NCBI GenBank assembly: GCA_977020255.1
Contig: CDROCS010000253.1
Coordinates: forward strand, 4,526,001 to 4,590,000
Length of the DNA: 64,000 nucleotides
Reading direction: 5' to 3'
DNA from: Obrimoposthia wandeli
Taxonomy: Eukaryota
In this document: piece after piece, positions 2 through 15,980 of the stretch
Layout: every line of letters starts with the position of its first letter
Numbering within the stretch: the stretch's first letter is position 1
Made by a program: the position numbers and the translations under genes
The notes under the pieces: generated by a model
What the model saw: only the letters and a program-made list of their open reading frames with translations
What the model was told of the DNA's origin: nothing
Databases searched by the model: none

Positions 2-319
2 ATGGGCACGACAACATCAGTGGGAGGTCCACCGATTGCATTAGTTTACCAAAACAGTAAACTTAGTACCGTAAGAGCAGAGCTTGGGCTTTTTTTTCTT
101 ATTGGCACGCTGGTCTCTCTGGCTATGTTATTTGCATCAGGCAATATAAATTATGCTCAAGTACAACTAACTTTGCCTTTGATCCCTGCGTTATTTATTG
201 GTTTTGGCTTGTCATTTTACTTGGATAAATACCTAGGACAGCGTTATTTAAAGCCATTAATTGCTACGCTTTCGCTGACGTCCTGTGGTGTTATTTTGCT
301 GAAAGTCTACTTTTATTGA
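2..319 (+). CDS. TauE/SafE (sulfite-exporter-like) membrane protein, C-terminal part (5' end outside window)
   Basis: Hydrophobic ORF open at the window edge; GTTTSVGGPP motif and helix pattern typical of the second half of TauE/SafE proteins. Confidence 0.75.
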   Translation: MGTTTSVGGPPIALVYQNSKLSTVRAELGLFFLIGTLVSLAMLFASGNINYAQVQLTLPLIPALFIGFGLSFYLDKYLGQRYLKPLIATLSLTSCGVILLKVYFY

Positions 320-498
320 CGTTTACTAAAGATTTAATTAACGTTTTTACTAAAGGTTATTGTTATTAAATAAGTGACTAAAATCAGCATTAATTAGCAT
401 CAACGTTACCCTTTATTTGTCATCTCCTTGCTCCTGAATAACCTGTTCCTCATAATGTCATGTCGCTCATCACATCCAAGCGTAGACAACTGGCAATA

Positions 499-657
499 AT
501 ACCAATCCCATTAAGTTTGTGATCTTGTTGTACATAGGGAAAATAAGTCAGGGCAAGGCGCTTGATTGAGCAATAGCTGGCTACTGGGATTGAGAGCAAC
601 GCTGACATGGAATATTTTAACCCGCACAAGTGGGCAATAAATCAATGGAATTGGTAT
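499..657. mobile_element. MITE-like intergenic element (159 bp) with 14-bp terminal inverted repeats
   Basis: Left end ATACCAATCCCATT (499-512); right end AATGGAATTGGTAT (644-657), whose reverse complement ATACCAATTCCATT matches 13/14. No ORF. A decayed copy lies near 32322. Confidence 0.7.
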
Positions 658-739
658 AACTTATTGAATAGGCCATTTTACATTAACGGAAGAAGTACTG
701 TAGCAATCCCCCTTTTAAGTATTCTTATTTTTAATAACA

Positions 740-768
740 AAAAACCGGCAAACTGCCGGCTTCTTATT
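740..768 (-). terminator. Intrinsic terminator downstream of RidA gene
   Basis: CCGGCA-aac-TGCCGG hairpin with an A-tract on its left (U-tract on the minus strand). Confidence 0.6.
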
Positions 769-815
769 TGACTCTAACTGCGATTAAAAATCATAATCGC
801 ACTTTTTCAAACTAT

Positions 816-1193
816 TTATTGTGGTACAGCCGCATACGCAACCACTTCACACAGCATTTCTTCGCGTGCCAAACCAGCAACAATCATTGCCGCTCTGTTA
901 GGATAAGGTGCTTGAAAATACTCAGCATACACTTTGTTAAACGCTGGTAACTGCTCACGAGCAGTGACATAAATAAGGACTTGCGTAACATCGTCCATAG
1001 TCAGTTTGGCTGCTTCAATTGTGTGCTTGAAGTTTTCCATGGTCTGACGTGCTTGCGCTTCAATTCCACCTTCAACTACCTGCCCTTGTGCATTAATTGG
1101 GATCTGAGCGGTTGATAAGGTGTTATTAGCAATAATTGCCCATTCTAACGGTGCTTTAGAAGCAAATAATTCTGTTTTTACTGGTGTTTTCAT
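816..1193 (-). CDS. RidA/YjgF/UK114 family protein
   Basis: 125 aa; LSTAQIP, IEAQARQTMENF, FNKVYAEYF..PYPNRA and CEV motifs; conserved Arg in PNRA. Confidence 0.9.
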   Translation of the reverse strand: MKTPVKTELFASKAPLEWAIIANNTLSTAQIPINAQGQVVEGGIEAQARQTMENFKHTIEAAKLTMDDVTQVLIYVTAREQLPAFNKVYAEYFQAPYPNRAAMIVAGLAREEMLCEVVAYAAVPQ

Positions 1194-1295
1194 AATTTTA
1201 CTCTGTAATTAAATTTAATCGATAACGTAACGCTTTAACAATAAATAACTTATTTAGTGTAGGTAGCGTTTGTCTTCAGAAGATAGGGATTAACC

Positions 1296-1333
1296 ATCAT
1301 GGTAGGTTCCTTTAAATAGGAACCTACCATGAT
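1296..1333. terminator. Perfect 16-bp hairpin between BCCT and RidA genes
   Basis: ATCATGGTAGGTTCCT-ttaaat-AGGAACCTACCATGAT; no clear U-tract, so terminator or mRNA-stabilising hairpin. Confidence 0.55.
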
Positions 1334-1346
1334 TAATTAGTTTGAC

Positions 1347-2906
1347 TTATAACCCTTGCTCATCGGCCATCTTGCGAGCAATTTGAGGTGCATTCCACAA
1401 GGATGGTAATAAAACCAAGGACACTGGAACTGCCGTTACCACAATAAATGATTGCAGTGCCGATATTCCGCCAGAGCCAATAGAGATAAGCAATGCTGCC
1501 ATAACACCCATCATAACGCCCCAAAATACGCGTAATGAACCCTGTGGAGAATCAGTCCCTGTCATTACCATAGATACTGAGTAGGTCATTGAATCACCCG
1601 TTGTCGCCACAAAAATAGTGGTTAATATCAAGAATAAGAACGATATTATCCAACCCAATGGCAACTGTTCTGTAATGGCAAGTAATGCCGCTGGTAAATT
1701 AAAACCAGTGAAAGGTTCTGAAATAACACCAGGTGTCGCTAACTCAAAAGCTAAACCACTGCCACCAACAATAGTGAACCAAAAACAGGTGATAACCGGC
1801 GCAACCACTGAAATAGTTAATATCATCTGACGGATAGTACGACCGCGAGATATACGGGCAACAAACATCGCCATTAACGGACCATAACCTAAAAACCATC
1901 CCCAAAAGAACACAGTCCACCAGTCAAGCCATGCAGTATTAGCACGGTAAGTCGCCATTGGAATAAAGTTATTTAGGTAAAGCCCAAAGGAGTGTAAATA
2001 ACTATCAAAGATAAAAGCAGTAGGACCAAAGATTAAAATAAATGCCATTAAGAAAATAGCGAGAACAATATTGATACTGCTTAAAAGTTGGATGCCTTTA
2101 GTAACACCACTCACTGCAGATAAGGTATAAATACAAATAAGACCAAACAATATCGCCAGCTGAGTCGTATAAGTATCAGGAATACCAAACAGTTTTTCTA
2201 AACCAAAGCTTACCTGTAAACCAAGAAAACCAATTGGGCCCACGGTACCTGCAACAACAGCGATCACACAACAAGAGTCAACAATAGTACCAAAAGCACC
2301 TTTCATCACTTTGTCGCCAAAGACAGGATAGAGTAAAGTACGCGGCTTTAACGGTAAGCCCTTATCATAATGTAAATGCATAAGCACTACGCCAGTCAAA
2401 CTACCCAAAATGGCCCAAGCTAAGAATCCCCAATGCATAAAGCTTTGTGCTAAAGCATTATAGGCGGCTTCTGCTGTGCCTGTTTCCCCACCGAAATGAG
2501 GAGGTGGGGAAGTAAAGTGCGCCATTGGTTCAGCTGCAGCCCAAAAGACACCGCCACCAGCAAGCAACGTACACATGATGATAGAAATCCATTTAAAGGT
2601 CGATATCTCAGGCGACTTTAACCCCCCTAACACAACACCACCAGTACGACTTATTGCCATAAAGATGCCAATAACAAAAGTCAGGAGCAGAAGTACTTGC
2701 CAGTAAGCGCCAAACATTTTGGTTGATGCAGCAAAAGCGGTATTAACCCAACTAGACATCATCTTAATATCATACAATGCTAATATAGCAAACAGCACCA
2801 GGGCGCCGCCACTAATCAAAAATACCGGTATATCTACCCCCTCTAGAAATTTGATTTTTGGCACTTTTACCTCGCTCTCTTCCACAACAGCTTTAGAAGT
2901 ATTCAT
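1347..2906 (-). CDS. BCCT (betaine/choline/carnitine) family transporter
   Basis: 519 aa, about 12 TM helices; AAEPM.HF, HWG..AWAI, WWTVFFWGWFLGYGP..MFVARISRGRTIR, FVATTGDS motifs. Confidence 0.95.
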   Translation of the reverse strand: MNTSKAVVEESEVKVPKIKFLEGVDIPVFLISGGALVLFAILALYDIKMMSSWVNTAFAASTKMFGAYWQVLLLLTFVIGIFMAISRTGGVVLGGLKSPEISTFKWISIIMCTLLAGGGVFWAAAEPMAHFTSPPPHFGGETGTAEAAYNALAQSFMHWGFLAWAILGSLTGVVLMHLHYDKGLPLKPRTLLYPVFGDKVMKGAFGTIVDSCCVIAVVAGTVGPIGFLGLQVSFGLEKLFGIPDTYTTQLAILFGLICIYTLSAVSGVTKGIQLLSSINIVLAIFLMAFILIFGPTAFIFDSYLHSFGLYLNNFIPMATYRANTAWLDWWTVFFWGWFLGYGPLMAMFVARISRGRTIRQMILTISVVAPVITCFWFTIVGGSGLAFELATPGVISEPFTGFNLPAALLAITEQLPLGWIISFLFLILTTIFVATTGDSMTYSVSMVMTGTDSPQGSLRVFWGVMMGVMAALLISIGSGGISALQSFIVVTAVPVSLVLLPSLWNAPQIARKMADEQGL

Positions 2907-2985
2907 TATTATAGTCTCCTGATAGTTCTCTTATCGTTATAATTTATTAAGTTCTACCTTTGTATTGAATGTCACTCAATACAAA

Positions 2986-3984
2986 CTAGTTCCCCAACAC
3001 TTGTGGTTTTAACCCCTCATCGAGTAAATTCAACCAGTTCATGCCCATGACCTTGGCGATATCTTCCGCCATAAAGCCTCGTTCTTGTAATCCTCGGGTA
3101 ATATTTGGAAAGTCACGGCTATCACGAAACCAAGATAACGGACGAGGCCAATCAGCATTTGCTTTTGAGCCTTCTCCATAATCCATTTCCTTTGACCAAC
3201 GTCCATTACGCATCCATTCAAGTACCGATAAAGGTTGTTCTTGACACAAATCTGTACCGATACCAATATGATCAATGCCCATTAAATCGGCAGTATTTGC
3301 CACCATATCGCAAAAATCATCCAAGCTACAATCAGGGCCATTTTTAAGATGAAACGGATAAAGGCTAAAGCCTAATAACCCACCTGATTCTCCCAATGCT
3401 TTTAGCACTGTGTCCGACTTATTGCGCTTGGCTTCATGGAAACTGTTCGGGTTGGCATGTGAGATCACAATAGGACGTTCAGAGATTTCTATCGCCTCTA
3501 AGGTACTACGCTCTCCACTGTGGCTCATATCTACCACCATACCAACACGGTTCATTTCCTTGATTACTTGTTTACCAAAGCGAGTAACACCACTGTCTTC
3601 TGCTTCATAACAACCACAAGCCAATAAGCTTTGATTGTTATAAGTCAGCTGCATAATCATCAGGTTGAGTTCACGCATGATCTCAACCATTGCTATATCA
3701 TCTTCAATAGGCGAGCAATTCTGCGCACCAAACATAATACCGACCTTGCCTAACTGTTTGGCAAGACGAATATCCGCCGTGCTTTTCACTGGCATGATCA
3801 AATCATGATGGAGCTCAAACTGGCGATTCCATTCACCTAATCGCAATAGTGTTTCTCTAATCTGTTCGTGGTAAACAACGGTGACATGCACCATGGTTAC
3901 ACCACCTTCTTTAAGCTGTTGAAAAATAGCCCGGTTCCAATTTGAGTACTGCAGGCCGTCAATGACAATAAGATCGTTATGCAT
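2986..3984 (-). CDS. M19 (membrane dipeptidase-like) amidohydrolase, atypical metal site
   Basis: 332 aa; LTYNNQS, EMNRVGMVVDMSH, ISHAN, RNKSD, HIGIGTD motifs. Confidence 0.9.
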   Translation of the reverse strand: MHNDLIVIDGLQYSNWNRAIFQQLKEGGVTMVHVTVVYHEQIRETLLRLGEWNRQFELHHDLIMPVKSTADIRLAKQLGKVGIMFGAQNCSPIEDDIAMVEIMRELNLMIMQLTYNNQSLLACGCYEAEDSGVTRFGKQVIKEMNRVGMVVDMSHSGERSTLEAIEISERPIVISHANPNSFHEAKRNKSDTVLKALGESGGLLGFSLYPFHLKNGPDCSLDDFCDMVANTADLMGIDHIGIGTDLCQEQPLSVLEWMRNGRWSKEMDYGEGSKANADWPRPLSWFRDSRDFPNITRGLQERGFMAEDIAKVMGMNWLNLLDEGLKPQVLGN

Positions 3985-3998
3985 AATGACTACTCGAT

Positions 3999-5441
3999 TT
4001 ATGAACGGATATAAGTGGTTTTTACGATAGTGTAAAATTCTTTTGCGTAGCTACCCATTTCACGTGAGCCAAAGCTAGAGTCTTTACGGCCACCAAAAGG
4101 TACGTGGTAATCAGTACCGGCTGTTGGCAAGTTCACCATCGCACAACCCGTTTGCGCATTGCGTTTGAAATGCGTTGCAGATTTAAGTGATTGCGTACAA
4201 ATACCACCCACTAAACCATAATTAGTGTCGTTCAGTGTAGCTAACGCTTCGTCATAGTCTTTCACTTTAATCACACAAGCGATCGGCGCAAAAGCTTCTT
4301 CACGGTTAATCGTCATTGCATTGGTGGTTTCGGTGAATAATGCTGGCGTTAGGTAATAACCTTCCGTTTCTTCAGTGATAACATCACCGCCACTCACTAA
4401 TTTACCACCTTCTTTTTTGGCAATTTCAAGATAGTTAAGGTTTTGCTTCATTTGACGAGCATCAGCAACAGCGCCAATATGAACGCCTTCACGTAAAGGA
4501 TGACCGACAACAAGTTGTTTCATTCTTGCAACAACCGCATCAACAAAACGATCGTGAATACCTTCAGTAACAATTAAACGCGATGAAGCAGTACATTTTT
4601 GACCTGTACCAAAGAAAGCACCGCCAACAGCACACTCAACAGCATTATCTAGATCCGCATCATCAAGCACGATGAGTGCATTTTTACTGCCCATTTCTAA
4701 TTGGCATTTTACTAAGTTTGTTGCTGTTGCTATGGCAACTTTCCGACCTGTTTCTAATGAACCAGTAAAAGTTAATGCGTTAATTTTTTTAGAGTTAATT
4801 AACAAGTCACCCACTTCTGCACCAGGACCCATTACTAGGTTAAACGTACCTGCAGGTAAACCTTGACGTGAGATGATTTCAGTTAATGCCCAAGCGCTCG
4901 CCGGTACTTGGTTTGCTGGTTTTAAAACAACCGAATTACCAAAGGCCAATGCCGGTGCAATTTTCCAAGCGGCAGTTGCCACAGGGAAGTTCCACGGTGT
5001 GATAATACCGACAACGCCAACAGGCTCTCTGCGGGTTTCAATTTCTATACCCGGACGAACTGAATCCGCAGTTTCACCCATTTGACGTAATACTTCAGCG
5101 GCATAATAATGGAAGAATTGACCAGAACGATAAATTTCGCCAGCGCCTTCAGGTAATGTTTTGCCTTCTTCTCGGGCTAACAACTTACCTAATTCATCTT
5201 TACGCGCAATAAGCTCATCACCAATGGCCATTAACACTGAATAGCGTTGCTCTAAGCCACTTTCTTGCCACTCAAGTTGGCCTTTAATCGCTGCGTCTAG
5301 CGCCGATTCGGCTTGTTCTTTGTTAGCTTGTGCGTAGTGACCAATAACATCACTGATGTCCGCTGGACTGATGTTAGCAAGTGAACTTGCGCCTTCTACC
5401 CATTCGCCATTGATGTAATTGCAAAAAATTGATTCAGACAT
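3999..5441 (-). CDS. NAD(P)-dependent aldehyde dehydrogenase, alpha-ketoglutaric semialdehyde dehydrogenase (YcbD)-like
   Basis: 480 aa from ATG 5441 (GGAGGT RBS); ITPWNFP, FTGS, EMGSKN, catalytic GQKCTA, EEAFAP, DYHVPFGGRKDSSFG. Confidence 0.9.
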   Translation of the reverse strand: MSESIFCNYINGEWVEGASSLANISPADISDVIGHYAQANKEQAESALDAAIKGQLEWQESGLEQRYSVLMAIGDELIARKDELGKLLAREEGKTLPEGAGEIYRSGQFFHYYAAEVLRQMGETADSVRPGIEIETRREPVGVVGIITPWNFPVATAAWKIAPALAFGNSVVLKPANQVPASAWALTEIISRQGLPAGTFNLVMGPGAEVGDLLINSKKINALTFTGSLETGRKVAIATATNLVKCQLEMGSKNALIVLDDADLDNAVECAVGGAFFGTGQKCTASSRLIVTEGIHDRFVDAVVARMKQLVVGHPLREGVHIGAVADARQMKQNLNYLEIAKKEGGKLVSGGDVITEETEGYYLTPALFTETTNAMTINREEAFAPIACVIKVKDYDEALATLNDTNYGLVGGICTQSLKSATHFKRNAQTGCAMVNLPTAGTDYHVPFGGRKDSSFGSREMGSYAKEFYTIVKTTYIRS

Positions 5442-5488
5442 AAATACCTCCATTAAATAATTGAAACTATTATAGGTAGTATGTTTTA

Positions 5489-5506
5489 ATAATAAAAATT
5501 AATAAA
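5489..5506. promoter_or_regulatory. Putative LysR binding site (T-N11-A)
   Basis: ATAATAAAAATTAATAAA in the divergent ALDH/LysR intergenic region; identical 18-mer at 6824-6841. Confidence 0.5.
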
Positions 5507-5531
5507 AAATATCTATTGATAAGGAATCCTT

Positions 5532-6467
5532 ATGTCACTACCTGAATTTAAAATAGCTCAGTTACGTCACTTCGTCTGGGTAGCTGAATTAAAAGGATTT
5601 CATACGGCGGCAGAAAAAGCTTGTCGAACTCAACCAGCAATATCTTTGTCCATTAGAGATCTAGAAAATAAACTGAGTACGGGACTTTTTGAAAAGCGTA
5701 ATGCAAAAACGTCAAATACTGAGCTAACACCTTTTGGTCAATATTTTTTACCTAAGGCGAAAGAACTTATTGCTCATCATGACAATGTTGCTCAGGATAT
5801 GGCATTGATGAGTGAACATAAAACAGGCCATTTACGTCTTGCTTCAGTACCCTCCATTGCGTGTAGGATGTTACCCGAGTTGTTATCAAAATTTATCGCT
5901 GATGTACCAGAGCTTCATATTAGTTTTTACGATGATAACTCCGAAGCGGTATTAAGAAAGGTTGAAAAACAACAAGTAGATATTGGGATCGCCAGTTTGC
6001 CCCATGGCCATGAACATGCCGACATCACTTTTACCCCTATCTGGGAAGATCAACTTGGTGTGGTTTGTCGTGAAGATCACCCTTTTGCGGATATGACTGA
6101 ACTACATTGGAAAGAGTTACGTAAACAACGATTGATCAGAAATGGTACCTCACGCCTACTTGAAGATACCGAAGCAGAGCCTTTATTAAGCGACTCGCAA
6201 TTTCTTATTTCTAATATGCTGTCATTAATCGCTATGCTTGAAGAAGGTCTTGGCATCACTACTTTACCCTGGTTTGCTTTTCCTAAAAATAATAACAAGC
6301 TCCGCTTTATCCCACTAACAACGCCTAAAATTGTCCGCCATATTGGGATAGTTCAGCTTAAAAATAAATCGTTATCCCCAGCAGCAGAAGCGCTGGCGAA
6401 CTTCATTTTGAAAAATACTAATCAAGATAAGGCTAAGGATGTGGAGTCTGACAACAACACTGAATAA
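5532..6467 (+). CDS. LysR family transcriptional regulator
   Basis: 311 aa; N-terminal HTH (QLRHF..VAELKGFHTAAEKACRTQPAISLSIRDLE) plus substrate-binding domain; divergent from the ALDH operon. Confidence 0.95.
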   Translation: MSLPEFKIAQLRHFVWVAELKGFHTAAEKACRTQPAISLSIRDLENKLSTGLFEKRNAKTSNTELTPFGQYFLPKAKELIAHHDNVAQDMALMSEHKTGHLRLASVPSIACRMLPELLSKFIADVPELHISFYDDNSEAVLRKVEKQQVDIGIASLPHGHEHADITFTPIWEDQLGVVCREDHPFADMTELHWKELRKQRLIRNGTSRLLEDTEAEPLLSDSQFLISNMLSLIAMLEEGLGITTLPWFAFPKNNNKLRFIPLTTPKIVRHIGIVQLKNKSLSPAAEALANFILKNTNQDKAKDVESDNNTE

Positions 6468-6517
6468 AAAAAGCACTATAACCAAAGCAAGAGTTGCCTT
6501 TGGTTATAGTGCTTTTT
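6468..6517. terminator. Long bidirectional terminator hairpin
   Basis: AAAAAGCACTATAACCAAAG...CTTTGGTTATAGTGCTTTTT (20-bp stem plus inner GCAA/TTGC) between the convergent LysR gene and small ORF. Confidence 0.85.
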
Positions 6518-6564
6518 ATTGGTATTAAATATTTCATTGCCACCAGTGCTGTGGCGAAATAAAA

Positions 6565-6747
6565 TCAATTGTAACCACGCACATAACTTTCCGTACTAAC
6601 ATCATTACAAAGTGCTTGCTCATTATTGCTTACATGCTGTTGGCTATTTTTAGTAGACGGGTGTTTATTCTCGCTAACAGCGACTTCTTTATGCTCTAAA
6701 TTTTTGGCGTTGAAATAATTACTATCGTTATTAGTTAGTGAATTCAT
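6565..6747 (-). CDS. Small polar hypothetical protein (60 aa, ends ESYVRGYN)
   Basis: GAGG RBS 7 nt before ATG 6747; terminator downstream; putative LysR box upstream. Confidence 0.55.
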   Translation of the reverse strand: MNSLTNNDSNYFNAKNLEHKEVAVSENKHPSTKNSQQHVSNNEQALCNDVSTESYVRGYN

Positions 6748-6823
6748 GGTGCACCTCAATCAATGTTTGCGGTTTACAAAGTACCGCTGTTGAATAGGCT
6801 ATGATTATAGTAAGCATTTTTTG

Positions 6824-6841
6824 ATAATAAAAATTAATAAA
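6824..6841. promoter_or_regulatory. Second copy of putative LysR binding site
   Basis: 18/18 identity to 5489-5506. Confidence 0.5.
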
Positions 6842-7257
6842 TAATATACAACGATAAAAAAAACTTATTCATGTTAGTAAAAATAAAATATCCGCAATAA
6901 AATTTTAGCTAATAAATTTATCCGATAATCTATCTGTTACCTTGTCATTAAACTCAATATCCCTCAAACAAAAAATATAATTGATATTTAAATAATAGCC
7001 ATATTATTCAAACAACTAACTACTACCAATAAGTTTTCCTTATCAGCTGATAGACCTTATTGGCTTGTATAAAGTGACAAAACTGGCCAAAAATAACATC
7101 ATATTCAATGAGGTCATTTTATCGACTTCATTAATAACCATGTTGATTTTATAAAGCGTCAACGGGTTAATACTGAATTTACTTCAAGACAAGAACAACA
7201 AGAAAATCGAAGCTAATTCAGATAACATATTTTGTATAGCAAATGAGGAGCAGTAAA

Positions 7258-8967
7258 ATGACAACAAATGCAGCTATCCACTCATCGCTTTGGGGTGAAA
7301 ATTCTTTACCACTTCGTCCTGCAAGTCAGGTGATGAAATTAGAGCGCCTTGGCGCTTACCACCAAAGTCGCCTAAGTTTCATGCGTACTTTGGTACGTCG
7401 AATATTTCGTGAACGCTGGAAGATTGAACCTTCCGTTTTTGAACTCGACCATGATGGCTACGGCACGGTTGTCTATGAAGTACAAGCTCCACATGGACTA
7501 TTCAGTTTTGTACTGTTTTCTGATTACCTTTCACCCGATGAACGAAATGACCGTGTAATTGCCACCAAGTGGGACCTTACTATGGCCCTAGTTGAAGGTA
7601 AGGTTGACCAAGCATATATTGAACAATTACGTGAAAACGTACCTAAACAAGAAGCTGGACGCGTAGATGCCCGTGTTTTTGTTTTATCTCGTGCCAACCG
7701 CAGCGCACGTAACTTTGATTATGTTGTAAACCAACTTGCTGCAGGGGAACAACCTGATGTAGCTAAAATTATTGAAGTGGGTTATTTATATCGTACTACT
7801 GCTGTTTATGGCAGCGGTAAACTCGGTATGGCTGATTGGGAAAAAGTGAAAGAAAAGCATAAAGATTTTGCCCGACCATTTGCCGGTGAAATGTTTGTTT
7901 GTTTGATGCTGCGCAACTTCAGTCTATTACAAGTTGAACATATTGCTCGCCATAAAAAGCCCGATACATTTAATCTGATGAAGCCTGAAATAAAGCGCTA
8001 CTTTGGTATTGGTAATTCAACGGGTTTAGGTATGGCGCCTTATTTGGTCAATCACCCACTGCTTATCAACCAATGGGTAGAAATGCGTGAATTGGCTTTA
8101 GCACGTATTCGTGCACTCGGCAGCGTTAACCAACAAGTACGTGAAACAATTAGTCAATTGATTGACCGCAGCGCACAACATACACTTGAAACACAGACTG
8201 AAGATGCGTGGCAAACCAATAATAATAAAGCGGTCATTAAAGATATGGCCTGCCTGAAAGATCGTATTGAAGGTGGTTTTGATTCATGGAACGAATTGGT
8301 TGAGCATAGTGAACAACATTGCTCATTACAGGGCCAAGAAATGTTAGTGTCTTGTATGCTCGAAATATACCCTGAACTTGTTGATGAATTAGAAGATTTT
8401 CACACAGCAGAAGAGTTTTTAGACCTTGATCCACTTATGCCTGCTGAGCAACTTAAAAGTATCATCGAAAAACGTTATGACTGGGCGCTAGCAATAGATT
8501 TTGACGCCGAAGGCGCTCGAGAAACTTACTGGTATCGTTCAGAAGAAAAAATGGAGCCTCGTTTAGGTATTGTTGCTGATATTGAAGGTAAAAAGAAACA
8601 AATGGCACTGGGTGTCGGGTATGCCGTACGTAAATGTTATAACCAATTAATCGATTATATCGCGCTAAATCCAGAGCACACCACCGCTCGATTTATGGTT
8701 GCCTATCCAAAATTACGTGGCATTGTCAGACGTATTCAAGGCATGAACCGCTGTGTTTATGGAGACATTCAAGCAAACCTGTTAGACAGAGAAGTATTAC
8801 CAATGCACTTATTACGCGCTAAATTAGCATTTTTTGGTGTGAGTAAGTTTGATCCCCGTTCTCGTTTATGGGTACGTAATACCATGTTCCAGGGTGCGCC
8901 ACTGTTAGAAGAAATTGGCCAAGCATTTAATGACGACTGGTTTATGCCACTAGCACCAAAGCAATAG
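7258..8967 (+). CDS. Hypothetical protein, 569 aa, probable enzyme of unknown family
   Basis: Long clean ORF, GAGGAG RBS before ATG 7258; soluble composition; motif-like Gly-rich segments (YRTTAVYGSGKLGMAD, GIGNSTGLGMAPYLVNHP). Confidence 0.85.
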   Translation: MTTNAAIHSSLWGENSLPLRPASQVMKLERLGAYHQSRLSFMRTLVRRIFRERWKIEPSVFELDHDGYGTVVYEVQAPHGLFSFVLFSDYLSPDERNDRVIATKWDLTMALVEGKVDQAYIEQLRENVPKQEAGRVDARVFVLSRANRSARNFDYVVNQLAAGEQPDVAKIIEVGYLYRTTAVYGSGKLGMADWEKVKEKHKDFARPFAGEMFVCLMLRNFSLLQVEHIARHKKPDTFNLMKPEIKRYFGIGNSTGLGMAPYLVNHPLLINQWVEMRELALARIRALGSVNQQVRETISQLIDRSAQHTLETQTEDAWQTNNNKAVIKDMACLKDRIEGGFDSWNELVEHSEQHCSLQGQEMLVSCMLEIYPELVDELEDFHTAEEFLDLDPLMPAEQLKSIIEKRYDWALAIDFDAEGARETYWYRSEEKMEPRLGIVADIEGKKKQMALGVGYAVRKCYNQLIDYIALNPEHTTARFMVAYPKLRGIVRRIQGMNRCVYGDIQANLLDREVLPMHLLRAKLAFFGVSKFDPRSRLWVRNTMFQGAPLLEEIGQAFNDDWFMPLAPKQ

Positions 8968-8976
8968 GAGAGTTCT

Positions 8977-9714
8977 GTGAATATTTCAATGAATGAATTA
9001 AAAGCAGCGCTACGCAGATGCTTTGAAGCAAGTGATTACTTTGTCGGTAATTATGAAGATGCCGCCAACATGGTGTTATGGTTAGAAAAACATGGCTTAA
9101 ATGGCTTGAGTGAATTCAAATTAGCGTTACCTTATATTGGCGAAGATAAAAAAAAGCCATTAAGCAATGTAATATATGAAGATAGTACGTCAGCAACTAT
9201 TGATGCTCACCATCGTAGCGCGCTTAATTGTATTGCGGCCGCAGTAGACCTAGCACATGCCAAAGCATTAGAAAGTGGTATAGCCACAGTAACAGTACAT
9301 AACTGCCATAACAGAATTTTTATTCTCAAAGCACTTACTGATCGTGGTCGTAGTGGCATTAGTGCTGCAGCTTACTGGCAAAATGGTAGCGATACCGTGA
9401 CCGAACATACTGCTGCCATTCGCTCAGGTCAACGCTACCCGAGTTACAGCGAAGGAATTACTAACCTAAAAAATAGTGATAATGACAAACAAGCGCTTAC
9501 TATTATTTGTAGTTCTCGAGTAGATTTAACCTCATCTTTACAAAATAGTAAAAGTCACTTTATTAGCCCTAAACAAGTTGAAAGCAACAAAGAACATACC
9601 GTTGAACATGGTATTGAAATTGATGAAGATGTTTGGAAAGAAATTAATAAAATAGGCTTAGGCGTGTTGGTTGAAAACACTGAGCGTTCACGAAAAGATG
9701 CCGGTGGCAATTAA
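8977..9714 (+). CDS. DUF3726-like protein with degenerate Ldh_2 (malate/L-lactate/DpkA reductase)-like features
   Basis: GTG start with AGGAG RBS, 9 nt after the previous stop; AVDLAHAKALESGIATVTVHNCHN resembles the Ldh_2 segment A..KA...GI..V.V.N.NH. Confidence 0.6.
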   Translation: MNISMNELKAALRRCFEASDYFVGNYEDAANMVLWLEKHGLNGLSEFKLALPYIGEDKKKPLSNVIYEDSTSATIDAHHRSALNCIAAAVDLAHAKALESGIATVTVHNCHNRIFILKALTDRGRSGISAAAYWQNGSDTVTEHTAAIRSGQRYPSYSEGITNLKNSDNDKQALTIICSSRVDLTSSLQNSKSHFISPKQVESNKEHTVEHGIEIDEDVWKEINKIGLGVLVENTERSRKDAGGN

Positions 9715-9911
9715 AAGTCCTTTCAGTACTGTCGGCAAATACCATGTATTTATTGACAGTACTGTAAAGAACACCTGAGCGGTATACAGGAAAATCTGGT
9801 ACTAGCGCGTTCGATACCCGGTCGCTCAAATGTAAAATAAAATCATACCGTCGACATAAATTAACAGCCCTCCATGGCATGTCTTTATGCACTGGAAAAG
9901 CGTTACCAAAG

Positions 9912-9951
9912 AAAAAGCTCCAGTACTTAGATTGATTCAGTAGTGGAGCTT
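9912..9951 (-). terminator. Intrinsic terminator for the minus-strand small ORF
   Basis: Minus strand: AAGCTCCA...TGGAGCTT followed by a T-run. Confidence 0.65.
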
Positions 9952-9987
9952 AAGTTCTCTATAGCAATTCAATCAACAACGATTTAG

Positions 9988-10125
9988 CTACTCCTCAGAT
10001 TGCGTTACTTCTACATCCATGTCATCTGCGACTGAGTTACCACTTAGTATTGCGGTCACAGCCATAATAATTACTGCAAGTATCACGGTTGTTAATTTGA
10101 AGCCTCTCGAGGATGAATTATTCAT
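9988..10125 (-). CDS. 45-aa small protein with signal-peptide/TM segment (missing from ORF track)
   Basis: Manual translation MNNSSSRGFKLTTVILAVIIMAVTAILSGNSVADDMDVEVTQSEE*; AAGGT RBS; own terminator. Confidence 0.6.
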   Translation of the reverse strand: MNNSSSRGFKLTTVILAVIIMAVTAILSGNSVADDMDVEVTQSEE

Positions 10126-10422
10126 TATTTTACCTTTACCACTACTGTTTGACTTATTGTTAATCTGTACTATTTATAAGCAGATGCGGTGACACTATAC
10201 CATTAACTTTTTTTTTACAAGTATTTTATATTTTTTGTTAAAAATAGGCGCTGCTCTCTATGATATCAAATAAATAGACACTAAAGGTTTCAATGACTGA
10301 TTGTTGATATATAGTATTTACTAACTAAGCTTAACCAGTGTATATCCAGACTTTGGACTTATCAGGCATCACTGAAATAAAAGGCTTTATCATCTTTTGT
10401 AAATATTATAATTGGGGATGCT

Positions 10423-11199
10423 TTGAAAAAAATAGTAATTTTTAGCTGGCTGTTATTAATACTTTCTAGCCACTCACTTAGTGCCGAAAAAATTGTTTTA
10501 TCTACGGGCGATTTCCCCCCATATAATTCAATATTAAGTAAACACTATGGGCTTATGCCTAGAATAGTCACTGAAGCATTTCGCCTTGAAGGAGTTGATG
10601 TCAAATATGAATTCTACCCATGGATTAGAGCTTACCAGACATCAAAAAATGGCAAGGTCAACGGTACTATTCAATCGTTACATTCAGTACAGCGCGAAAA
10701 GGATCATTATTACAGCGAGCCTATAATGCAGGAACAGGTTGTATGGTTTCACATGAAAAACAAACCATTCCACTGGAATAGCTTTGCAGATATATCTACA
10801 TTGAGAGTAGGCGCAATCAGAGGGTTTACCTATAGCCAACTTTTTAATCAAGCCATCGATGATAAGGTATTTGATGTTTACTATGTAGGAAGACATGATC
10901 AAAGTTTTACTATGCTGTTGAAAGACCGTATTGATGTGTTCCCAGAAAACTTGGAAGTTGGTCTATACCAAATAGCTACACTATACCCGACAAAAACTAA
11001 AGAGCGATTTACCCATCACCCCAAACCGCTCTTAACTGAGTGGAATCATCTGTTACTTTCCAGAAAGCGTCCAGATAGTCTCAAATTCATGAAAAAATTC
11101 AATAAAGGTTTAAATAAAATGAAAAGAAGTGGGAAGTTAGAACTATATATTCAAGAGTCTAGAAAAAATTATGATGAACATAAAATAGTATCTCAATAG
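10423..11199 (+). CDS. Orphan periplasmic solute-binding protein (family 3-like)
   Basis: Signal peptide; DFPPY, IVTEAF...GV.V.Y..YPW.RA, VGAIRGFTY, MLLKDRIDV motifs. Confidence 0.85.
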   Translation: MKKIVIFSWLLLILSSHSLSAEKIVLSTGDFPPYNSILSKHYGLMPRIVTEAFRLEGVDVKYEFYPWIRAYQTSKNGKVNGTIQSLHSVQREKDHYYSEPIMQEQVVWFHMKNKPFHWNSFADISTLRVGAIRGFTYSQLFNQAIDDKVFDVYYVGRHDQSFTMLLKDRIDVFPENLEVGLYQIATLYPTKTKERFTHHPKPLLTEWNHLLLSRKRPDSLKFMKKFNKGLNKMKRSGKLELYIQESRKNYDEHKIVSQ

Positions 11200-11309
11200 A
11201 CAGATGAACCTGCCCTACATTTCATTTACTTGTAGTTAAACGCTATCACTAAACTAACTTTAATTATAGCGATCTTCATTAACAAGTCGTGAACTTAAGA
11301 CTAGTGTAA

Positions 11310-13658
11310 CTAACTCATTAAATCAAAAATTAATCCTTGTTGAATTTCTTGCTGCTCATTTGATGAGATAGTGACTCGAATAGAAGCATTTAATACCCCT
11401 GCACCAGAACTTAAAGCACCTAAACTAGTATTCCCTCCTAATAATTGACTGTATTTAATGGCCATGGCCAGTGTAGTGCTGTCTGTAGTTAACTCATCAT
11501 GACTTTGAGCGTAGGATATTTGTTCATTTGAATTGGTTGTCACAGGGTTTAGCGATGATAAAGTAAAAAATAAACTAGCCTCTGCAAGCTTATGCTGATG
11601 AAGCTTAATCGATAAACGCAGTCCATCGGCTTTCAATAAATGGTGTGCACTTTCAATCAAAGCGTTGAGCAACTTTTGTATATATAATTCATCGCTATTG
11701 ATATAGTGAGGCACTCGCTCATCAATCAGGAAAAAAATAGATTTCCCCTCATAAGCATTGCTTGCTTTGAATACCGATTCTGTACGTTGTAAAAATCCAT
11801 AAAAATCAAAACAGTCTTCTTTAGCAGTAATTTTCCCTGATTCTATGTTAGACAAATCCATCATAGTATCCAGTAGCAGTGCAACATTGCTGCCCGCATG
11901 GCTTATTCCTGTTACCTGCTCATTATTAATACCTTTTTTCTTTAACTGTTCAACAAATGCTTTTATTGCTAATAACGGTACACGCAACTCTTTATTTAGG
12001 CTCTGTAAAAAATTACTTTTAGCTAAACTTTTTTTATCTGAGTTTTCTTTCGCTAAAATAAGTGCCCTAGTTTTAATCTCAACTTGCTGCCCTAATTCAC
12101 TTGAATAGGCTGCCATCATTAATACCAGCATTTGAAATAATACCGCGCAAAATGTGCCCCCGATAAGTACAGCCCATGCTTGCCAACTTTTAGTTTGACT
12201 AAACCAAGGCTGTTTTTCCGTAATAGTAATTTGCCAAAATCGAGAAAACACTTCAACCGTAATAGTCTCAACATGGCGATTTACCGTAGGAAAAGCCTGA
12301 CCAAACAAAGTAAAGGTTTTGTTACTTGAAACATCTTGAATAAAAAAACTAACCTCTTGATCTTTTTGCTGCGCAAGGCGTTTAAAAAAATGGTCAAACT
12401 GGGCAACCGCCACAACAAAACCTAAGAACTTACCTTCTTTAATTAACGATAACTTCTGCTGCTTATAATTATCAATAGGGGCGTTGTCCTCTGGAGGTAG
12501 AAAAACAGCTTTACTAAATAGTATACCGGGCTTAGCTAACTCGTCTTGTACTAACGTCATTGGTGCACTGGCAATGACTTCTTTGCTATGAGCAACCGCT
12601 TGCATAGATAAAATATGCGTAGGATTAGTATAAACATCTAAGCCTAAAGCGGCTTGGTTATTGTATTGGGGATAAATATAGTACAAAGGAGCATATTGCG
12701 TACGGTGCTTGGCTAGGATCATATTACCATTTGCCAAAAGTTCTTTAATTTGAAAGTCTTTATGCAGCATTATTGAGCTTTCTTGTTCAAAACGTCTTCG
12801 ATGAGCAAAGGGAACAATGGGTGCCCACTCTAACGCCCTCACACTTGAGCCCCGCTCAAGGATACTTTCACTAAACAAGTTAAACTCTGTTAATGAAATA
12901 TTATCACGGGCTTTAAATAAAGCCGAAAGGCTATTGATTTTGTTCACAACCGCATCAACTTCAGCGAGTACTAAACGCTTTATTTCCACTTTCGATTGCT
13001 TAAAAAGTGCTTGCCTATAATCTTGCTGTTCATGCTGAGAGGTTTTAAGTAATAATAAAATAGCAAAACCACCTAAAACAGAGGTAAAGCTCACAAAAAA
13101 TCGTTTAGTAAATTTAAATTTATCGGCATTTTTAGCTAACAACAATAATGGAATAAAAAATACCGCGACTAACATACTCATTGACCAAGTATTAATGAAG
13201 GTATAGAAAAAAGTACCTGCTATGACTTGATTATCAAGCATAGCAATAACTAATACCGAACAAGCAGAGACTAAACTTGCCATGGGGCCAATACGTAATA
13301 AAAAGAAAAATAGGTTCTTTCTTGATGTTAACCACACTTTATAATGGATAAAACCAAAAACTAACTGCTTAGTCCAACATGCTTGTAAAATCATAGCTAG
13401 CACGGCAATTGTCATCACTGCCAAATTGGCATCTAGGTGAAAGTAATAACCAAGACCAAATGCCAATAGGGGGCTCACGAATAACACTGCAATAAGTGGC
13501 GTAATGCCCCAAATCAACAGTAACCCACTAATGAGTGCCGCTGATGGACCAACAAAGTTAACTAATGATTGTGGGTTGATAAGCCATATAGCACCAAAAC
13601 ATATGGCGATATATAAAATGGCAGAAATAAAAAAACGTGATAAGTGGAGTTGCATCAT
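11310..13658 (-). CDS. MASE1-like/CHASE membrane sensor with degenerate histidine-kinase module
   Basis: N-terminal TM bundle; CHASE motifs (ALEWAP, YAPLYYIYP..N.AALGLDV, APMTLVQD); HisKA-like KSNFLQSLNKELRVPL lacks the His. Confidence 0.8.
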   Translation of the reverse strand: MMQLHLSRFFISAILYIAICFGAIWLINPQSLVNFVGPSAALISGLLLIWGITPLIAVLFVSPLLAFGLGYYFHLDANLAVMTIAVLAMILQACWTKQLVFGFIHYKVWLTSRKNLFFFLLRIGPMASLVSACSVLVIAMLDNQVIAGTFFYTFINTWSMSMLVAVFFIPLLLLAKNADKFKFTKRFFVSFTSVLGGFAILLLLKTSQHEQQDYRQALFKQSKVEIKRLVLAEVDAVVNKINSLSALFKARDNISLTEFNLFSESILERGSSVRALEWAPIVPFAHRRRFEQESSIMLHKDFQIKELLANGNMILAKHRTQYAPLYYIYPQYNNQAALGLDVYTNPTHILSMQAVAHSKEVIASAPMTLVQDELAKPGILFSKAVFLPPEDNAPIDNYKQQKLSLIKEGKFLGFVVAVAQFDHFFKRLAQQKDQEVSFFIQDVSSNKTFTLFGQAFPTVNRHVETITVEVFSRFWQITITEKQPWFSQTKSWQAWAVLIGGTFCAVLFQMLVLMMAAYSSELGQQVEIKTRALILAKENSDKKSLAKSNFLQSLNKELRVPLLAIKAFVEQLKKKGINNEQVTGISHAGSNVALLLDTMMDLSNIESGKITAKEDCFDFYGFLQRTESVFKASNAYEGKSIFFLIDERVPHYINSDELYIQKLLNALIESAHHLLKADGLRLSIKLHQHKLAEASLFFTLSSLNPVTTNSNEQISYAQSHDELTTDSTTLAMAIKYSQLLGGNTSLGALSSGAGVLNASIRVTISSNEQQEIQQGLIFDLMS

Positions 13659-15860: not shown

Positions 15861-15980
15861 GCAAATGAGTTAAGCGGGCTACAACGTCTGACAAACAGTC
15901 GTTGTAGCCCATACTCCGTATTATTCCTATAAGTTATTACTAGCTTATCGATTAAAACAATCCGTAAATGCAGTGAAGTT

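What the first reader, a model, noticed from the sequence alone, without database searches (positions are those of the whole stretch)
2..9714. LysR-centred cluster that looks like an uncharacterised catabolic pathway for a betaine/sulfonium-type osmolyte
Seen: an ALDH-M19 hydrolase-BCCT-RidA run divergent from a LysR gene, followed by a 569-aa unassignable protein coupled to a degenerate Ldh_2-like protein, with a TauE-like gene at the edge. Established: BCCT proteins import methylated onium compounds; RidA proteins clear reactive imines/enamines; YcbD-type ALDHs make 2-oxoglutarate from its semialdehyde. The gene set does not match the pathways I know for glycine betaine (Gbc/Dgc), carnitine, proline or hydroxyproline betaine (Rieske Hpb), ectoine (Doe/Eut) or DMSP (Ddd lyases, DmdA); none of those signature enzymes is present. 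Inference: a distinct pathway for an unidentified marine osmolyte feeding the TCA cycle.
Basis: partly seen in the sequence, partly recalled or inferred. Interest (0 to 1): 0.8.

Follow-up and report, generated by a model that had tools for sequence, protein, structure and literature searches.

The report
Homarine catabolism operon (hom) of Colwellia
This gene cluster is real and tightly conserved, but it is almost certainly the homarine-degrading hom operon published in 2026, so the pathway is already known even though the chemistry of its two central proteins is still unsolved.

Summary
Window 2-9714 holds RidA-like, BCCT, M19 and ALDH genes on the minus strand, a divergent LysR gene, then a 569-aa protein with no family hit and a 245-aa DUF3726/Ldh_2-like protein. 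A TauE-like fragment lies at the window edge.

The set is strongly syntenic. Of 80 related genome loci, 70 keep ALDH, M19, the 569-aa gene and the DUF3726 gene together. In Porticoccaceae and Roseobacter-group loci they run in one direction.

The cluster matches the homABCDER/homT operon for homarine (N-methylpicolinate) catabolism (Ferrer-Gonzalez et al., Nat Microbiol 2026, PMC13236597). My mapping is:
- ALDH = HomD
- M19 = HomC
- BCCT = HomT
- 569-aa protein = HomB
- DUF3726 protein = HomA
- LysR = HomR
- HomE = RidA-like or TauE-like, unresolved

I could not retrieve the validated Cobetia or Ruegeria pomeroyi sequences. The link therefore rests on gene order, published locus-tag annotations and the paper's descriptions.

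New here:
- HomB folds confidently (pLDDT 94) with no significant match among solved structures, and has no flavin or metal signature.
- HomA is a truncated Ldh_2.
- HomB(+HomA) sits next to an M19 gene in seven of eight paralogous or divergent contexts examined.
- A 26-nt operator is conserved across several gammaproteobacterial lineages and is duplicated in this window.

Verdict: already known. Interest is low to moderate.

The parts
2..319 (+). C-terminal 105 codons of a TauE/SafE-like membrane protein, cut by the window edge. It is an accessory member of the cluster and a HomE candidate.
   Evidence: Pfam TauE scores 28.9 bits, below the cut-off. A full-length TauE gene is syntenic in 46 of 80 loci: directly after the DUF3726 gene in 39 and on the other side of the cluster or elsewhere in 7. 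In Neptunomonas L009 it overlaps the DUF3726 stop codon.
816..1193 (-). Rid-family (RidA-like) protein, the last gene of the ALDH-M19-BCCT-Rid operon. It is a HomE candidate.
   Evidence: Pfam Ribonuc_L-PSP scores 76.6 bits. TIGR00004 scores 72.7 bits, below its 106 cut-off. The best solved relatives are YjgF/RidA family proteins. It is present in 54 of 80 loci and always lies after BCCT.
1296..1333 (.). Hairpin with a 16-bp stem between the BCCT and Rid genes.
   Evidence: Terminator-like scan.
1347..2906 (-). BCCT transporter, inferred HomT (homarine importer).
   Evidence: Pfam BCCT scores 518 bits. It is below the glycine-betaine equivalog cut-off, at 346 against 650. It sits inside the cluster in 62 of 80 loci. 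The paper's homT is a predicted glycine betaine transporter inside the Cobetia operon.
2986..3984 (-). M19 (renal-dipeptidase-like amidohydrolase), inferred HomC.
   Evidence: Pfam Peptidase_M19 scores 272 bits. The best solved relative is 2i5g 'amidohydrolase', E 7e-71. An M19 gene is adjacent to HomB-like genes in seven of the eight paralogous or divergent contexts examined; the exception is L082.
3999..5453 (-). NAD(P)-dependent aldehyde dehydrogenase, inferred HomD.
   Evidence: Pfam Aldedh scores 512 bits. The nearest NCBIfam model, GucD, scores 483 bits, below its 770 cut-off. It is 74-99% identical in syntenic gammaproteobacterial loci and about 61% in Porticoccaceae.
5454..5531 (.). 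78-nt divergent homD/homR control region. The conserved 26-nt operator core lies at 5487-5512.
   Evidence: The spacer length and a core close to TAATAATAAAAATTAATAAATAATAT, followed by GATAAGG, are conserved in about 55 loci from several gammaproteobacterial lineages.
5532..6467 (+). LysR-type regulator, inferred HomR.
   Evidence: Pfam HTH_1 and LysR_substrate. It is divergent from the ALDH gene in the gammaproteobacterial loci, and a LysR gene holds the same position in the Roseobacter-group loci.
6468..6517 (.). Perfect 20-nt inverted repeat directly after the LysR stop codon. It is probably a bidirectional terminator.
   Evidence: Inverted repeat I1, 100% complementary. The sequence was read directly.
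6565..6747 (-). Small 60-codon ORF with a GAGGTG Shine-Dalgarno sequence, divergent from homB. Its function is unknown.
   Evidence: The full-length ORF is kept in five Colwellia and Thalassotalea loci at 37-75% amino-acid identity.
6804..6868 (.). Second copy of the homD/homR control region. The operator core lies at 6822-6847, about 410 nt upstream of homB.
   Evidence: 65-nt direct repeat, 78% identical to 5469-5533. The core has 1 mismatch. Among the loci scanned, a second core copy was detected only where homR and homB, or homR and homD, have been separated.
7258..8967 (+). 569-aa protein of an unnamed family, inferred HomB. It is the most conserved and most specific gene of the cluster.
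   Evidence: No Pfam or NCBIfam hit. All 8000 scored candidates were significant, with 73-96% identity among the best 120. 1331 cluster representatives at 50% identity were found. The AF2 model has pLDDT 94 and no significant match among solved structures.
8977..9714 (+). 245-aa DUF3726 protein, a truncated Ldh_2 relative and inferred HomA. It is the partner of HomB.
   Evidence: Pfam DUF3726 scores 75 bits and the Ldh_2 N-terminus 35.4 bits. A family profile hits YiaK (1nxu) at E 1.5e-5, over residues 1-116 and 297-333 only. It is fused to HomB in proteins of about 760-960 aa.

Best explanation
The cluster is the Colwellia copy of the homarine (N-methylpicolinate) catabolic operon.

Proposed working:
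1. HomR (LysR) binds a conserved AT-rich operator in the 78-nt divergent region. In this genome it also binds a duplicated copy upstream of homB. It switches on both transcription units when homarine is present.
2. HomT (BCCT) imports homarine.
3. HomB (569 aa) works with its partner HomA (the DUF3726 protein) to carry out the unusual first step that opens the N-methylpyridinium ring.
4. HomC (M19 amidohydrolase) hydrolyses the amide bond exposed by ring opening. This is most simply an N-methylformamide, releasing formate.
5. HomD (ALDH) oxidises the terminal aldehyde to the acid.
6. The resulting N-methyl-2-iminoglutarate (or its enamine) is reduced to N-methylglutamate. Alternatively, where the Rid protein acts, it is hydrolysed.
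7. An mgd/sox-type N-methylglutamate dehydrogenase encoded elsewhere then gives glutamate.

What is shown and what is inferred:
- Shown here: the genes, their synteny, the fusion of HomB and HomA, and the operator.
- Shown in the paper: genetic necessity of homB, homC, homD and homR, N-methylglutamate as product, and intermediates C7H9NO5, C6H9NO4 and C6H9NO3.
- Inferred by me: which enzyme does which step.
For: Gene content is confirmed.

Synteny. Seventy of 80 loci keep ALDH, M19, the 569-aa gene and the DUF3726 gene together. In Porticoccaceae the order is LysR(-), ALDH, M19, (BCCT), 569-aa gene, DUF3726 gene, all in one direction.

The paper. The Cobetia operon runs homE-homA-homB-homT-homC-homD-homR. 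HomC is a predicted peptidase, HomD an ALDH and HomT a predicted glycine-betaine transporter. The homA and homB HMMs are specific, and homB reaches E 1e-240 against 1e-57 for homA. Field transcripts came from Porticoccaceae and Oceanospirillaceae.

Roseobacter-group loci. Ruegeria sp. locus L086 reads LysR(-), ALDH, M19, 569-aa homologue, DUF3726, Ldh_2. This is the order of SPO3192 down to SPO3187. Independent papers call SPO3187 ComC (an Ldh_2 family enzyme), SPO3188 hypothetical and SPO3186 a BCCT. The Phaeobacter plasmid locus adds a BCCT gene and adjacent sarcosine-oxidase-like genes.

HomA-HomB partnership. Fused proteins exist, which agrees with the paper's predicted heterodimer.

Intermediates. 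The three published formulae fit these steps, by my own arithmetic:
- reductive oxygenolytic ring cleavage gives C7H9NO4
- ALDH gives C7H9NO5
- deformylation gives C6H9NO4, or C6H9NO3 if it happens before the oxidation
- reduction gives C6H11NO4, which is N-methylglutamate

Operator conservation is shown.
Against: I never obtained the validated Cobetia sp. OBi1 or R. pomeroyi DSS-3 sequences. They were not among the 120 best hits of either protein search aimed at the Roseobacter group. Orthology is therefore inferred from gene order and annotations, not measured.

The window's HomB is only 38-39% identical to the Roseobacter-group homologues. Paralogues at about 30% sit in other contexts, so substrate drift within the family is possible.

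The paper says HomA has FAD-binding motifs. I found no FAD or NAD domain in the window, Ruegeria or Phaeobacter DUF3726 proteins, even at E up to 1.

No reductase for the last step is encoded in the gammaproteobacterial cluster.
Confidence: 0.88

Rival explanations
1. The cluster has the same enzyme architecture but serves a related substrate. It would degrade another N-methylated heteroaromatic or betaine-type metabolite, such as trigonelline or another pyridinium or imidazolium betaine, rather than homarine.
For: The HomB family is large and diverse, with 1331 representatives. Paralogous HomB/HomA/M19 modules occur with ABC, MFS or OpuAC transporters and with an aminotransferase in place of an ALDH. 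The window protein is 38-39% identical to the Roseobacter-group proteins.
Against: The gammaproteobacterial loci have the composition of the validated Cobetia operon: regulator, BCCT and five further genes. The very lineages that hold close homologues responded to homarine in the paper's incubations. The partner genes ALDH, M19, BCCT and LysR are the same in the gammaproteobacterial and Roseobacter-group versions.
Confidence: 0.08
2. One reading: this is a still-uncharacterised pathway for an unidentified osmolyte, unrelated to any published system.
For: No library names the 569-aa protein, and no paper mentions DUF3726.
Against: A published operon has the same gene set, order and taxonomic range.
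Confidence: 0.03
3. There are two unrelated units that merely sit side by side: an ALDH-M19-BCCT-Rid operon, and a separate pair made of the 569-aa and DUF3726 genes.
For: In this window the two units are separated by the LysR gene, a terminator-like hairpin and 790 nt. A few loci hold the pair without ALDH and M19 within 10 kb (L010, L025, L029, L082).
Against: The genes are co-directional and contiguous in Porticoccaceae, the Roseobacter group and locus L083. The operator is duplicated in front of the second unit. M19 is adjacent to HomB-like genes in seven of eight paralogous or divergent contexts examined.
Confidence: 0.01

Closest known systems
homABCDER/homT homarine catabolic operon (Cobetia sp. 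OBi1 ACFLL8_11490-11520; Ruegeria pomeroyi SPO3188-3192; PMC13236597)
   Same: The gene set matches: a regulator, a BCCT-type transporter, a peptidase-like gene, an ALDH, and an adjacent pair of family-specific proteins, one large and highly conserved and one small. The order matches the Porticoccaceae and Ruegeria loci. The taxonomic range also matches.
   Different: In Colwellia the genes are split into two divergent or separated units, with homR between them and a duplicated operator. Which gene is HomE remains unclear. I found no FAD-binding motif in the HomA equivalent.
Trigonelline pathway TgnA-F of Acinetobacter baylyi (from my own knowledge and as cited in PMC13236597)
   Same: Both pathways handle an N-methylpyridinium carboxylate. 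Both open the ring before demethylation and follow with an aldehyde dehydrogenase and an amide hydrolase. The published homarine intermediates fit a Tgn-like sequence of steps.
   Different: HomB and HomA have no detectable similarity to flavin reductases or oxygenases. The hydrolase is an M19 amidohydrolase. The product keeps the N-methyl group as N-methylglutamate.
Ldh_2 family (PF02615: YiaK, ComC, and DpkA/N-methyl-L-amino-acid dehydrogenase)
   Same: HomA keeps the N-terminal roughly 115 residues and the C-terminal helix of this fold. A full-length Ldh_2 gene follows homA in Ruegeria and Phaeobacter. By analogy with DpkA (my own knowledge), that gene could reduce the N-methyl imine to N-methylglutamate.
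   Different: HomA lacks the central roughly 180 residues of the fold and scores below the Pfam cut-off. It is probably a scaffold or partner subunit, not a dehydrogenase.
[quoted passage not shown]
   Same: That operon begins with a putative dipeptidase of 325 codons followed by a hypothetical gene. This is the same length as 2i5g, the closest solved relative of HomC.
   Different: Whether PA5397 is a HomB/HomA homologue, and whether 2i5g is PA5396, rests only on my memory and was not tested.

Membership tests
hom operon (homarine catabolism) | Adjacent homA-homB pair of family-specific proteins, with homB large and highly conserved and homA smaller and weakly conserved. | tested here: met
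   The 569-aa gene and the 245-aa DUF3726 gene lie 9 nt apart. They are adjacent in 77 of 80 loci. Conservation is 73-96% among the best 120 homologues of the large protein and about 14-25% across the diverse set aligned for the small one. This matches the paper's HMM behaviour.
hom operon (homarine catabolism) | homC (peptidase-like) and homD (ALDH) lie close to homAB. | tested here: met
   M19 lies at 2986-3984 and ALDH at 3999-5453, within 5 kb of homB. Both are present in 72 of 80 loci.
hom operon (homarine catabolism) | homR regulator, and in Cobetia a glycine-betaine-type transporter homT inside the operon. | tested here: met
   LysR lies at 5532-6467 and BCCT at 1347-2906.
hom operon (homarine catabolism) | Auxiliary homE, present in 93% of gammaproteobacterial operons. 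| tested here: inconclusive
   There are two candidates. The Rid-family gene is present in 54 of 80 loci and always lies after BCCT. The TauE-like gene is present in 46 of 80 loci, next to homA in 39 and on the other side or elsewhere in 7. The paper's text does not say what kind of protein HomE is.
hom operon (homarine catabolism) | Sequence orthology to the validated genes SPO3188-3192 and ACFLL8_11490-11520. | not testable with these tools
   The reference sequences were not retrievable. The support is indirect: Ruegeria sp. locus L086 has the same order as SPO3192 to SPO3187, and the flanking annotations agree.
hom operon (homarine catabolism) | Growth on homarine, induction by homarine, and N-methylglutamate as product. 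| not testable with these tools
The paper names no Colwellia.
hom operon (homarine catabolism) | Companion mgd/sox-type N-methylglutamate dehydrogenase elsewhere in the genome. | not tested
   The ten further ORFs of the window that I scanned (of 35 ORFs of 150 aa or more beyond 13 kb) hold none. An unchecked scan note (s1-250314) reports an MGD-like cluster elsewhere in this genome.
TgnAB-type two-component flavin oxygenase | A flavin reductase or FAD-binding subunit together with an oxygenase subunit. | tested here: not met
   HomB and HomA equivalents have no flavin, Rieske or oxygenase domain at E up to 1. HomB has one conserved His and no conserved Cys. No structural match was found.
Ldh_2 (PF02615) oxidoreductases | Full-length domain of about 330 residues scoring above the Pfam cut-off. 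| tested here: not met
   The score is 35.4 bits against a cut-off of 38.8. Only profile positions 1-114 match. The family profile matches YiaK residues 1-116 and 297-333 only.
Peptidase M19 / renal dipeptidase amidohydrolases | Full-length M19 domain above the cut-off. | tested here: met
   The score is 272 bits against a cut-off of 26, covering profile positions 31-318 of 319. 2i5g matches at E 7e-71. The metal ligands were not checked.
Alpha-ketoglutaric semialdehyde dehydrogenase (GucD/YcbD equivalog) | Score above the NCBIfam equivalog cut-off. | tested here: not met
   The score is 482.7 bits against a cut-off of 770. This is the nearest model but the protein is not an equivalog.
Archetypal RidA (TIGR00004) | Score above the subfamily cut-off. 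| tested here: not met
   The score is 72.7 bits against a cut-off of 106.25. The protein belongs to the Rid family, but its subfamily is undetermined.

The most novel reading that the evidence does not exclude
HomB with HomA would be a categorically new kind of ring-opening enzyme, not the TgnAB-like flavin pair the paper suggests. Four observations leave this open:
- HomB has a confidently predicted fold with no significant match among solved structures.
- HomB has no flavin, Fe-S or 2-His-1-carboxylate signature. It has an arginine-rich set of conserved residues and a glycine-rich loop.
- HomA is a truncated Ldh_2 scaffold.
- HomB(+HomA) is next to an M19 hydrolase in seven of eight paralogous or divergent contexts examined.

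The trio would then be a general, unrecognised catabolic module that bacteria combine with different transporters and downstream enzymes to attack other N-heterocyclic or quaternary compounds.
Probability: 0.35. Interest if true: 0.7.

Novelty: already known. Interest (0 to 1): 0.3.

Why it matters
Homarine is among the most abundant small nitrogen-containing metabolites in surface seawater. The hom operon is how bacteria turn it into glutamate. Recognising the operon in a cold-water Colwellia adds one host to a range the paper already puts at more than 11,000 genomes, so the pathway assignment itself is not news.

The biochemistry remains open. No one has shown what HomA and HomB do.
- HomB has no significant match among solved structures and no obvious cofactor signature.
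- HomA is a cut-down Ldh_2.
- The HomB/HomA/M19 trio recurs in other catabolic contexts.
- The HomR operator is sharply defined.

Tried and rejected
Attempts to get the validated sequences:
- The paper's supplementary tables are not held.
- Two protein searches seeded with Phaeobacter and Ruegeria HomB homologues did not list R. pomeroyi DSS-3 among the best 120 hits.
- Three cluster look-ups gave no Roseobacter-group, Cobetia or P. aeruginosa names.

Structure:
- The second, from 83 diverse sequences, was good. Neither Foldseek against the PDB (best E 0.086, TM about 0.1) nor the wide VIA-align search (best Z 5.5) gave a significant match.
- Many GNAT-fold rows appear at Z 4.3-5.4. That is within the tool's stated noise range, so I do not assign the fold.

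Other checks:
- Literature searches for DUF3726 and for the gene combination found nothing.
- I rejected the ALDH as a true 2-oxoglutarate-semialdehyde dehydrogenase and the Rid protein as archetypal RidA, because both score below the curated cut-offs.
- I rejected the SBP_bac_3 gene (10423-11199) and the CHASE histidine kinase (11310-13658) as cluster members. The kinase recurs in only one Colwellia locus. The binding protein gives only weak 22% matches elsewhere, in three loci.
- The idea that P. aeruginosa PA5396/PA5397 is a paralogous module could not be tested.

Full report
**Observation**

| Window position | Strand | Gene | Key scores |
|---|---|---|---|
| 2-319 | + | TauE/SafE-like fragment, cut by the window edge | 28.9 bits, below the 32.6 cut-off |
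| 816-1193 | - | Rid-family protein | Ribonuc_L-PSP 76.6 bits; below TIGR00004 |
| 1347-2906 | - | BCCT transporter | 518 bits |
| 2986-3984 | - | M19 amidohydrolase | 272 bits |
| 3999-5453 | - | Aldehyde dehydrogenase | 512 bits; nearest curated model GucD at 483 bits against a 770 cut-off |
| 5532-6467 | + | LysR regulator, divergent across 78 nt | HTH_1 and LysR_substrate |
| 7258-8967 | + | 569-aa protein | no Pfam or NCBIfam hit |
| 8977-9714 | + | 245-aa protein, 9 nt downstream | DUF3726 75 bits; Ldh_2 N-terminus 35.4 bits against 38.8 |

The organism is a Colwellia. The 569-aa protein is 96% identical to one from Colwellia sp. Bg11-28.

**Synteny**

The 569-aa protein belongs to a very large family. 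All 8000 scored candidates were significant, and the best 120 are 73-96% identical. They come from Colwellia, Thalassotalea, Pseudoalteromonas, Marinobacterium, Amphritea, Neptunomonas, Motiliproteus and Reinekea. Almost all are annotated 'hypothetical', and two carry what look like automatic mis-annotations.

I fetched 80 genome loci with it and mapped the window proteins onto them.
- The DUF3726 gene is adjacent in 77.
- ALDH and M19 are present in 72.
- BCCT is present in 62, Rid in 54 and TauE in 46.
- ALDH, M19, the 569-aa gene and the DUF3726 gene are together in 70.

Most gammaproteobacteria share the window's layout: Rid-BCCT-M19-ALDH, then divergent LysR, then the 569-aa gene and the DUF3726 gene. 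In Oceanospirillales and Pseudomonas a TauE gene follows the DUF3726 gene. In Neptunomonas japonica it overlaps that gene's stop codon. In Porticoccaceae the genes are co-directional: LysR(-), ALDH, M19, (BCCT), 569-aa gene, DUF3726 gene. This is one functional unit, not two neighbours.

**Identification**

A full-text search led to Ferrer-Gonzalez et al., Nat Microbiol 2026 (PMC13236597). They define a homarine (N-methylpicolinate) operon, homABCDER plus homT.

In Cobetia sp. OBi1 the locus-tag order is homE, homA, homB, homT, homC, homD, homR.
- HomT is a 'predicted glycine betaine transporter'.
- HomC is predicted to be a peptidase.
- HomD is an ALDH-like oxidoreductase.
- HomA and HomB have unclear function and are predicted to form a heterodimer.

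The homA and homB HMMs are specific, while the homC and homD HMMs are not. HomB reaches E 1e-240, against 1e-57 for homA. In the field, transcripts of homC and homD from Porticoccaceae and of homB from Oceanospirillaceae rose after homarine addition.

Read backwards, the Cobetia order is exactly the Porticoccaceae order seen here. This gives ALDH = HomD, M19 = HomC, BCCT = HomT, the 569-aa protein = HomB and the DUF3726 protein = HomA.

**Indirect link to the validated genes**

I could not obtain the validated sequences. I tested the mapping indirectly.
- A Ruegeria sp. locus (L086) reads LysR(-), ALDH, M19, 569-aa homologue, DUF3726, Ldh_2.
- In R. pomeroyi the paper assigns SPO3192 = homR, SPO3191 = homD, SPO3190 = homC, SPO3189 = homB and SPO3188 = homA.
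- Independent papers annotate SPO3188 as hypothetical (PMC4809877), SPO3187 as ComC, an Ldh_2-family sulfolactate dehydrogenase (PMC4334477), and SPO3186 as a BCCT (PMC10130141).
- A Phaeobacter inhibens plasmid has LysR(-), ALDH, membrane dipeptidase, BCCT, hypothetical, DUF3726, Ldh-family oxidoreductase. Sarcosine-oxidase-like subunits lie immediately beside this set. That fits the paper's link to N-methylglutamate dehydrogenase.

I put the identification at about 0.88. The remainder is mostly the possibility of a related substrate.

**HomB**

A model built from 83 diverse family members is confident (pLDDT 94, pTM 0.93).
- Foldseek found no solved structure (best E 0.086, TM about 0.1).
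- In AlphaFold DB the significant matches are uncharacterised relatives, one carrying a PAS-domain label on a 173-aa fragment. They include proteins of 773 and 915 aa.
- The wide VIA-align search peaked at Z 5.5. Many GNAT-fold rows score Z 4.3-5.4. The tool's own note places this within noise, so I treat it only as a lead.

Residues conserved in at least 85% of the 83 sequences include many arginines, one histidine (H266) and no cysteine. There is also a loop G250-I-G252-N253-S-T-G256-L-G258. Nothing suggests a flavin, Rieske, Fe-S or 2-His-1-carboxylate site.

**HomA**

Its family is weakly conserved, at about 14-25% identity to the window protein across the diverse set I aligned. It keeps an N-terminal DUF3726 region and an invariant C-terminal S-R-x-x-A-G tail.

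A profile of the family matches E. coli YiaK (1nxu, Ldh_2 family) at E 1.5e-5, but only over YiaK residues 1-116 and 297-333. HomA is therefore an Ldh_2 that has lost its central portion.

I found no FAD-binding domain in the window, Ruegeria or Phaeobacter versions. This sits uneasily with the paper's statement about HomA.

HomA is fused to the C-terminus of HomB in many proteins of roughly 760-960 aa. That supports a physical complex.

**A wider module**

I examined eight paralogous or divergent HomB contexts. Seven have an M19 gene adjacent, often with overlapping stop and start codons.
- L081: LysR(-), ALDH, M19, HomB-like, with a DMGDH-like gene nearby.
- L083, a low-GC marine locus: ALDH, M19, HomB-like, DUF3726, BCCT.
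- Sinorhizobium meliloti pSymB: IclR, HomB-like, HomA-like, dipeptidase, ABC transporter, aminotransferase.
- L088: M19 then a fused HomB-HomA protein, on a short contig.
- L089: M19 and an ABC transporter ahead of a fused protein.
- L090: IclR, a fused protein, M19, an MFS transporter.
- L091: LysR, M19, a fused protein, and an OpuAC-type binding protein further downstream.
- L092: LacI, M19, HomB-like, with an ABC transporter upstream.

One further context (L082) has HomB-like and DUF3726 genes without an M19 gene nearby. HomB(+HomA)+M19 therefore looks like a reusable core.

HomC's closest solved relative is 2i5g, an 'amidohydrolase' of 325 residues (E 7e-71).

**Mechanism (inferred)**

The paper reports N-methylglutamate (C6H11NO4) as product. 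It also reports labelled intermediates C7H9NO5, C6H9NO4 and C6H9NO3, and shows that the ring opens before demethylation. It does not assign steps.

By analogy with the trigonelline pathway (my own knowledge), these steps reproduce all three formulae:
1. Homarine (C7H7NO2) plus 2[H] plus O2 gives 2-(N-methylformamido)-5-oxopent-2-enoate, C7H9NO4. This would be the HomAB step.
2. Oxidation of the aldehyde by HomD gives C7H9NO5.
3. Deformylation by HomC gives C6H9NO4. If deformylation comes before the oxidation, it gives C6H9NO3.
4. Reduction of the N-methyl enamine or imine gives N-methylglutamate.

The full-length Ldh_2 next to homA in the Roseobacter-group loci is a natural candidate for the last step. 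The family includes DpkA-type N-methyl-amino-acid dehydrogenases (my own knowledge). The gammaproteobacterial clusters lack that gene and carry a Rid-family protein instead. It could hydrolyse or tautomerise the same imine. That step is open.

**Regulation**

The 78-nt homD/homR spacer is remarkably conserved. About 55 loci from Alteromonadales, Oceanospirillales, Marinomonas and Endozoicomonas keep a 26-nt core close to TAATAATAAAAATTAATAAATAATAT, followed by GATAAGG. Pseudomonas has a recognisable variant.

In this window a 65-nt copy of the region (6804-6868, 78% identical) lies upstream of homB. Between LysR and that copy are a perfect 20-bp hairpin (6468-6517) and a small conserved ORF. 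Among the loci scanned, a second core copy was detected only where homR and homB, or homR and homD, have been separated. The duplication therefore probably preserves HomR control of homBA.

**Boundaries and companions**

The SBP_bac_3 gene and the CHASE kinase to the right are not syntenic. The ten further ORFs of the window that I scanned hold glycolysis, histidine and other housekeeping genes and no mgd or sox genes. An unchecked scan note reports an MGD-like cluster elsewhere in this genome.

**Verdict**

It is the published hom operon, so its novelty is 'already known'. The remaining interest lies in the unsolved enzymology of HomA and HomB.

Noticed in passing
window 6565-6747 (-): A 60-codon ORF with a good Shine-Dalgarno sequence lies between homR and homB, just left of the duplicated operator. 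The full-length ORF is kept in five Colwellia and Thalassotalea loci at 37-75% amino-acid identity, although DNA identity is about as high as protein identity. It may be a HomR-controlled small protein.
   Followed up: partly
window 5469-5533 and 6804-6868: A 65-nt direct repeat (78% identical) duplicates the divergent homD/homR control region in front of homB. Colwellia relatives have spacers of 2-3.3 kb here and also carry a second operator copy.
   Followed up: yes
L085 (Sinorhizobium meliloti pSymB) 7223-16854: A paralogous module reads IclR, HomB-like (30% identical), HomA-like, dipeptidase, ABC transporter, aminotransferase. The substrate is unknown. It is widespread on Sinorhizobium and Ensifer megaplasmids, which account for 70 of the 168 plasmid records hit.
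   Followed up: partly
L082 10422-11273 and L091 5747-6859: Methyltransf_7 (SABATH-type) methyltransferase genes sit near HomB-like genes in two unrelated loci. By my own knowledge this family includes plant carboxyl and N-methyltransferases. The meaning is unclear.
   Followed up: no
window 2986-3984 (HomC) against PDB 2i5g: The closest solved structure is an unpublished-looking 'amidohydrolase' of 325 residues. This is the same length as P. aeruginosa PA5396, the first gene of the dimethylglycine operon PA5396-PA5397-dgcAB. Whether that operon holds a HomB/HomA/M19 paralogue was not tested.
   Followed up: partly
model of window 7258-8967: The weak structural matches (Z 4.3-5.4) are dominated by GNAT-fold acyltransferases and AHL synthases. 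The invariant G-x-G-N-S-T-G-x-G loop sits between a strand and a helix, as the pyrophosphate-binding motif does in GNATs. This is within noise and is only a lead.
   Followed up: partly
window 1296-1333: A hairpin with a 16-bp stem lies between the BCCT and Rid genes. It may uncouple Rid expression from the rest of the operon.
   Followed up: no
L084 (Phaeobacter inhibens plasmid pP54_a) 1-1788 and 11483-16893: On this plasmid the hom genes are flanked by sarcosine-oxidase-like subunits, a DMGDH-like FAD oxidoreductase, a second ALDH and a ring-hydroxylating dioxygenase alpha subunit. This looks like a plasmid-borne island for methylated-amine catabolism.
   Followed up: no
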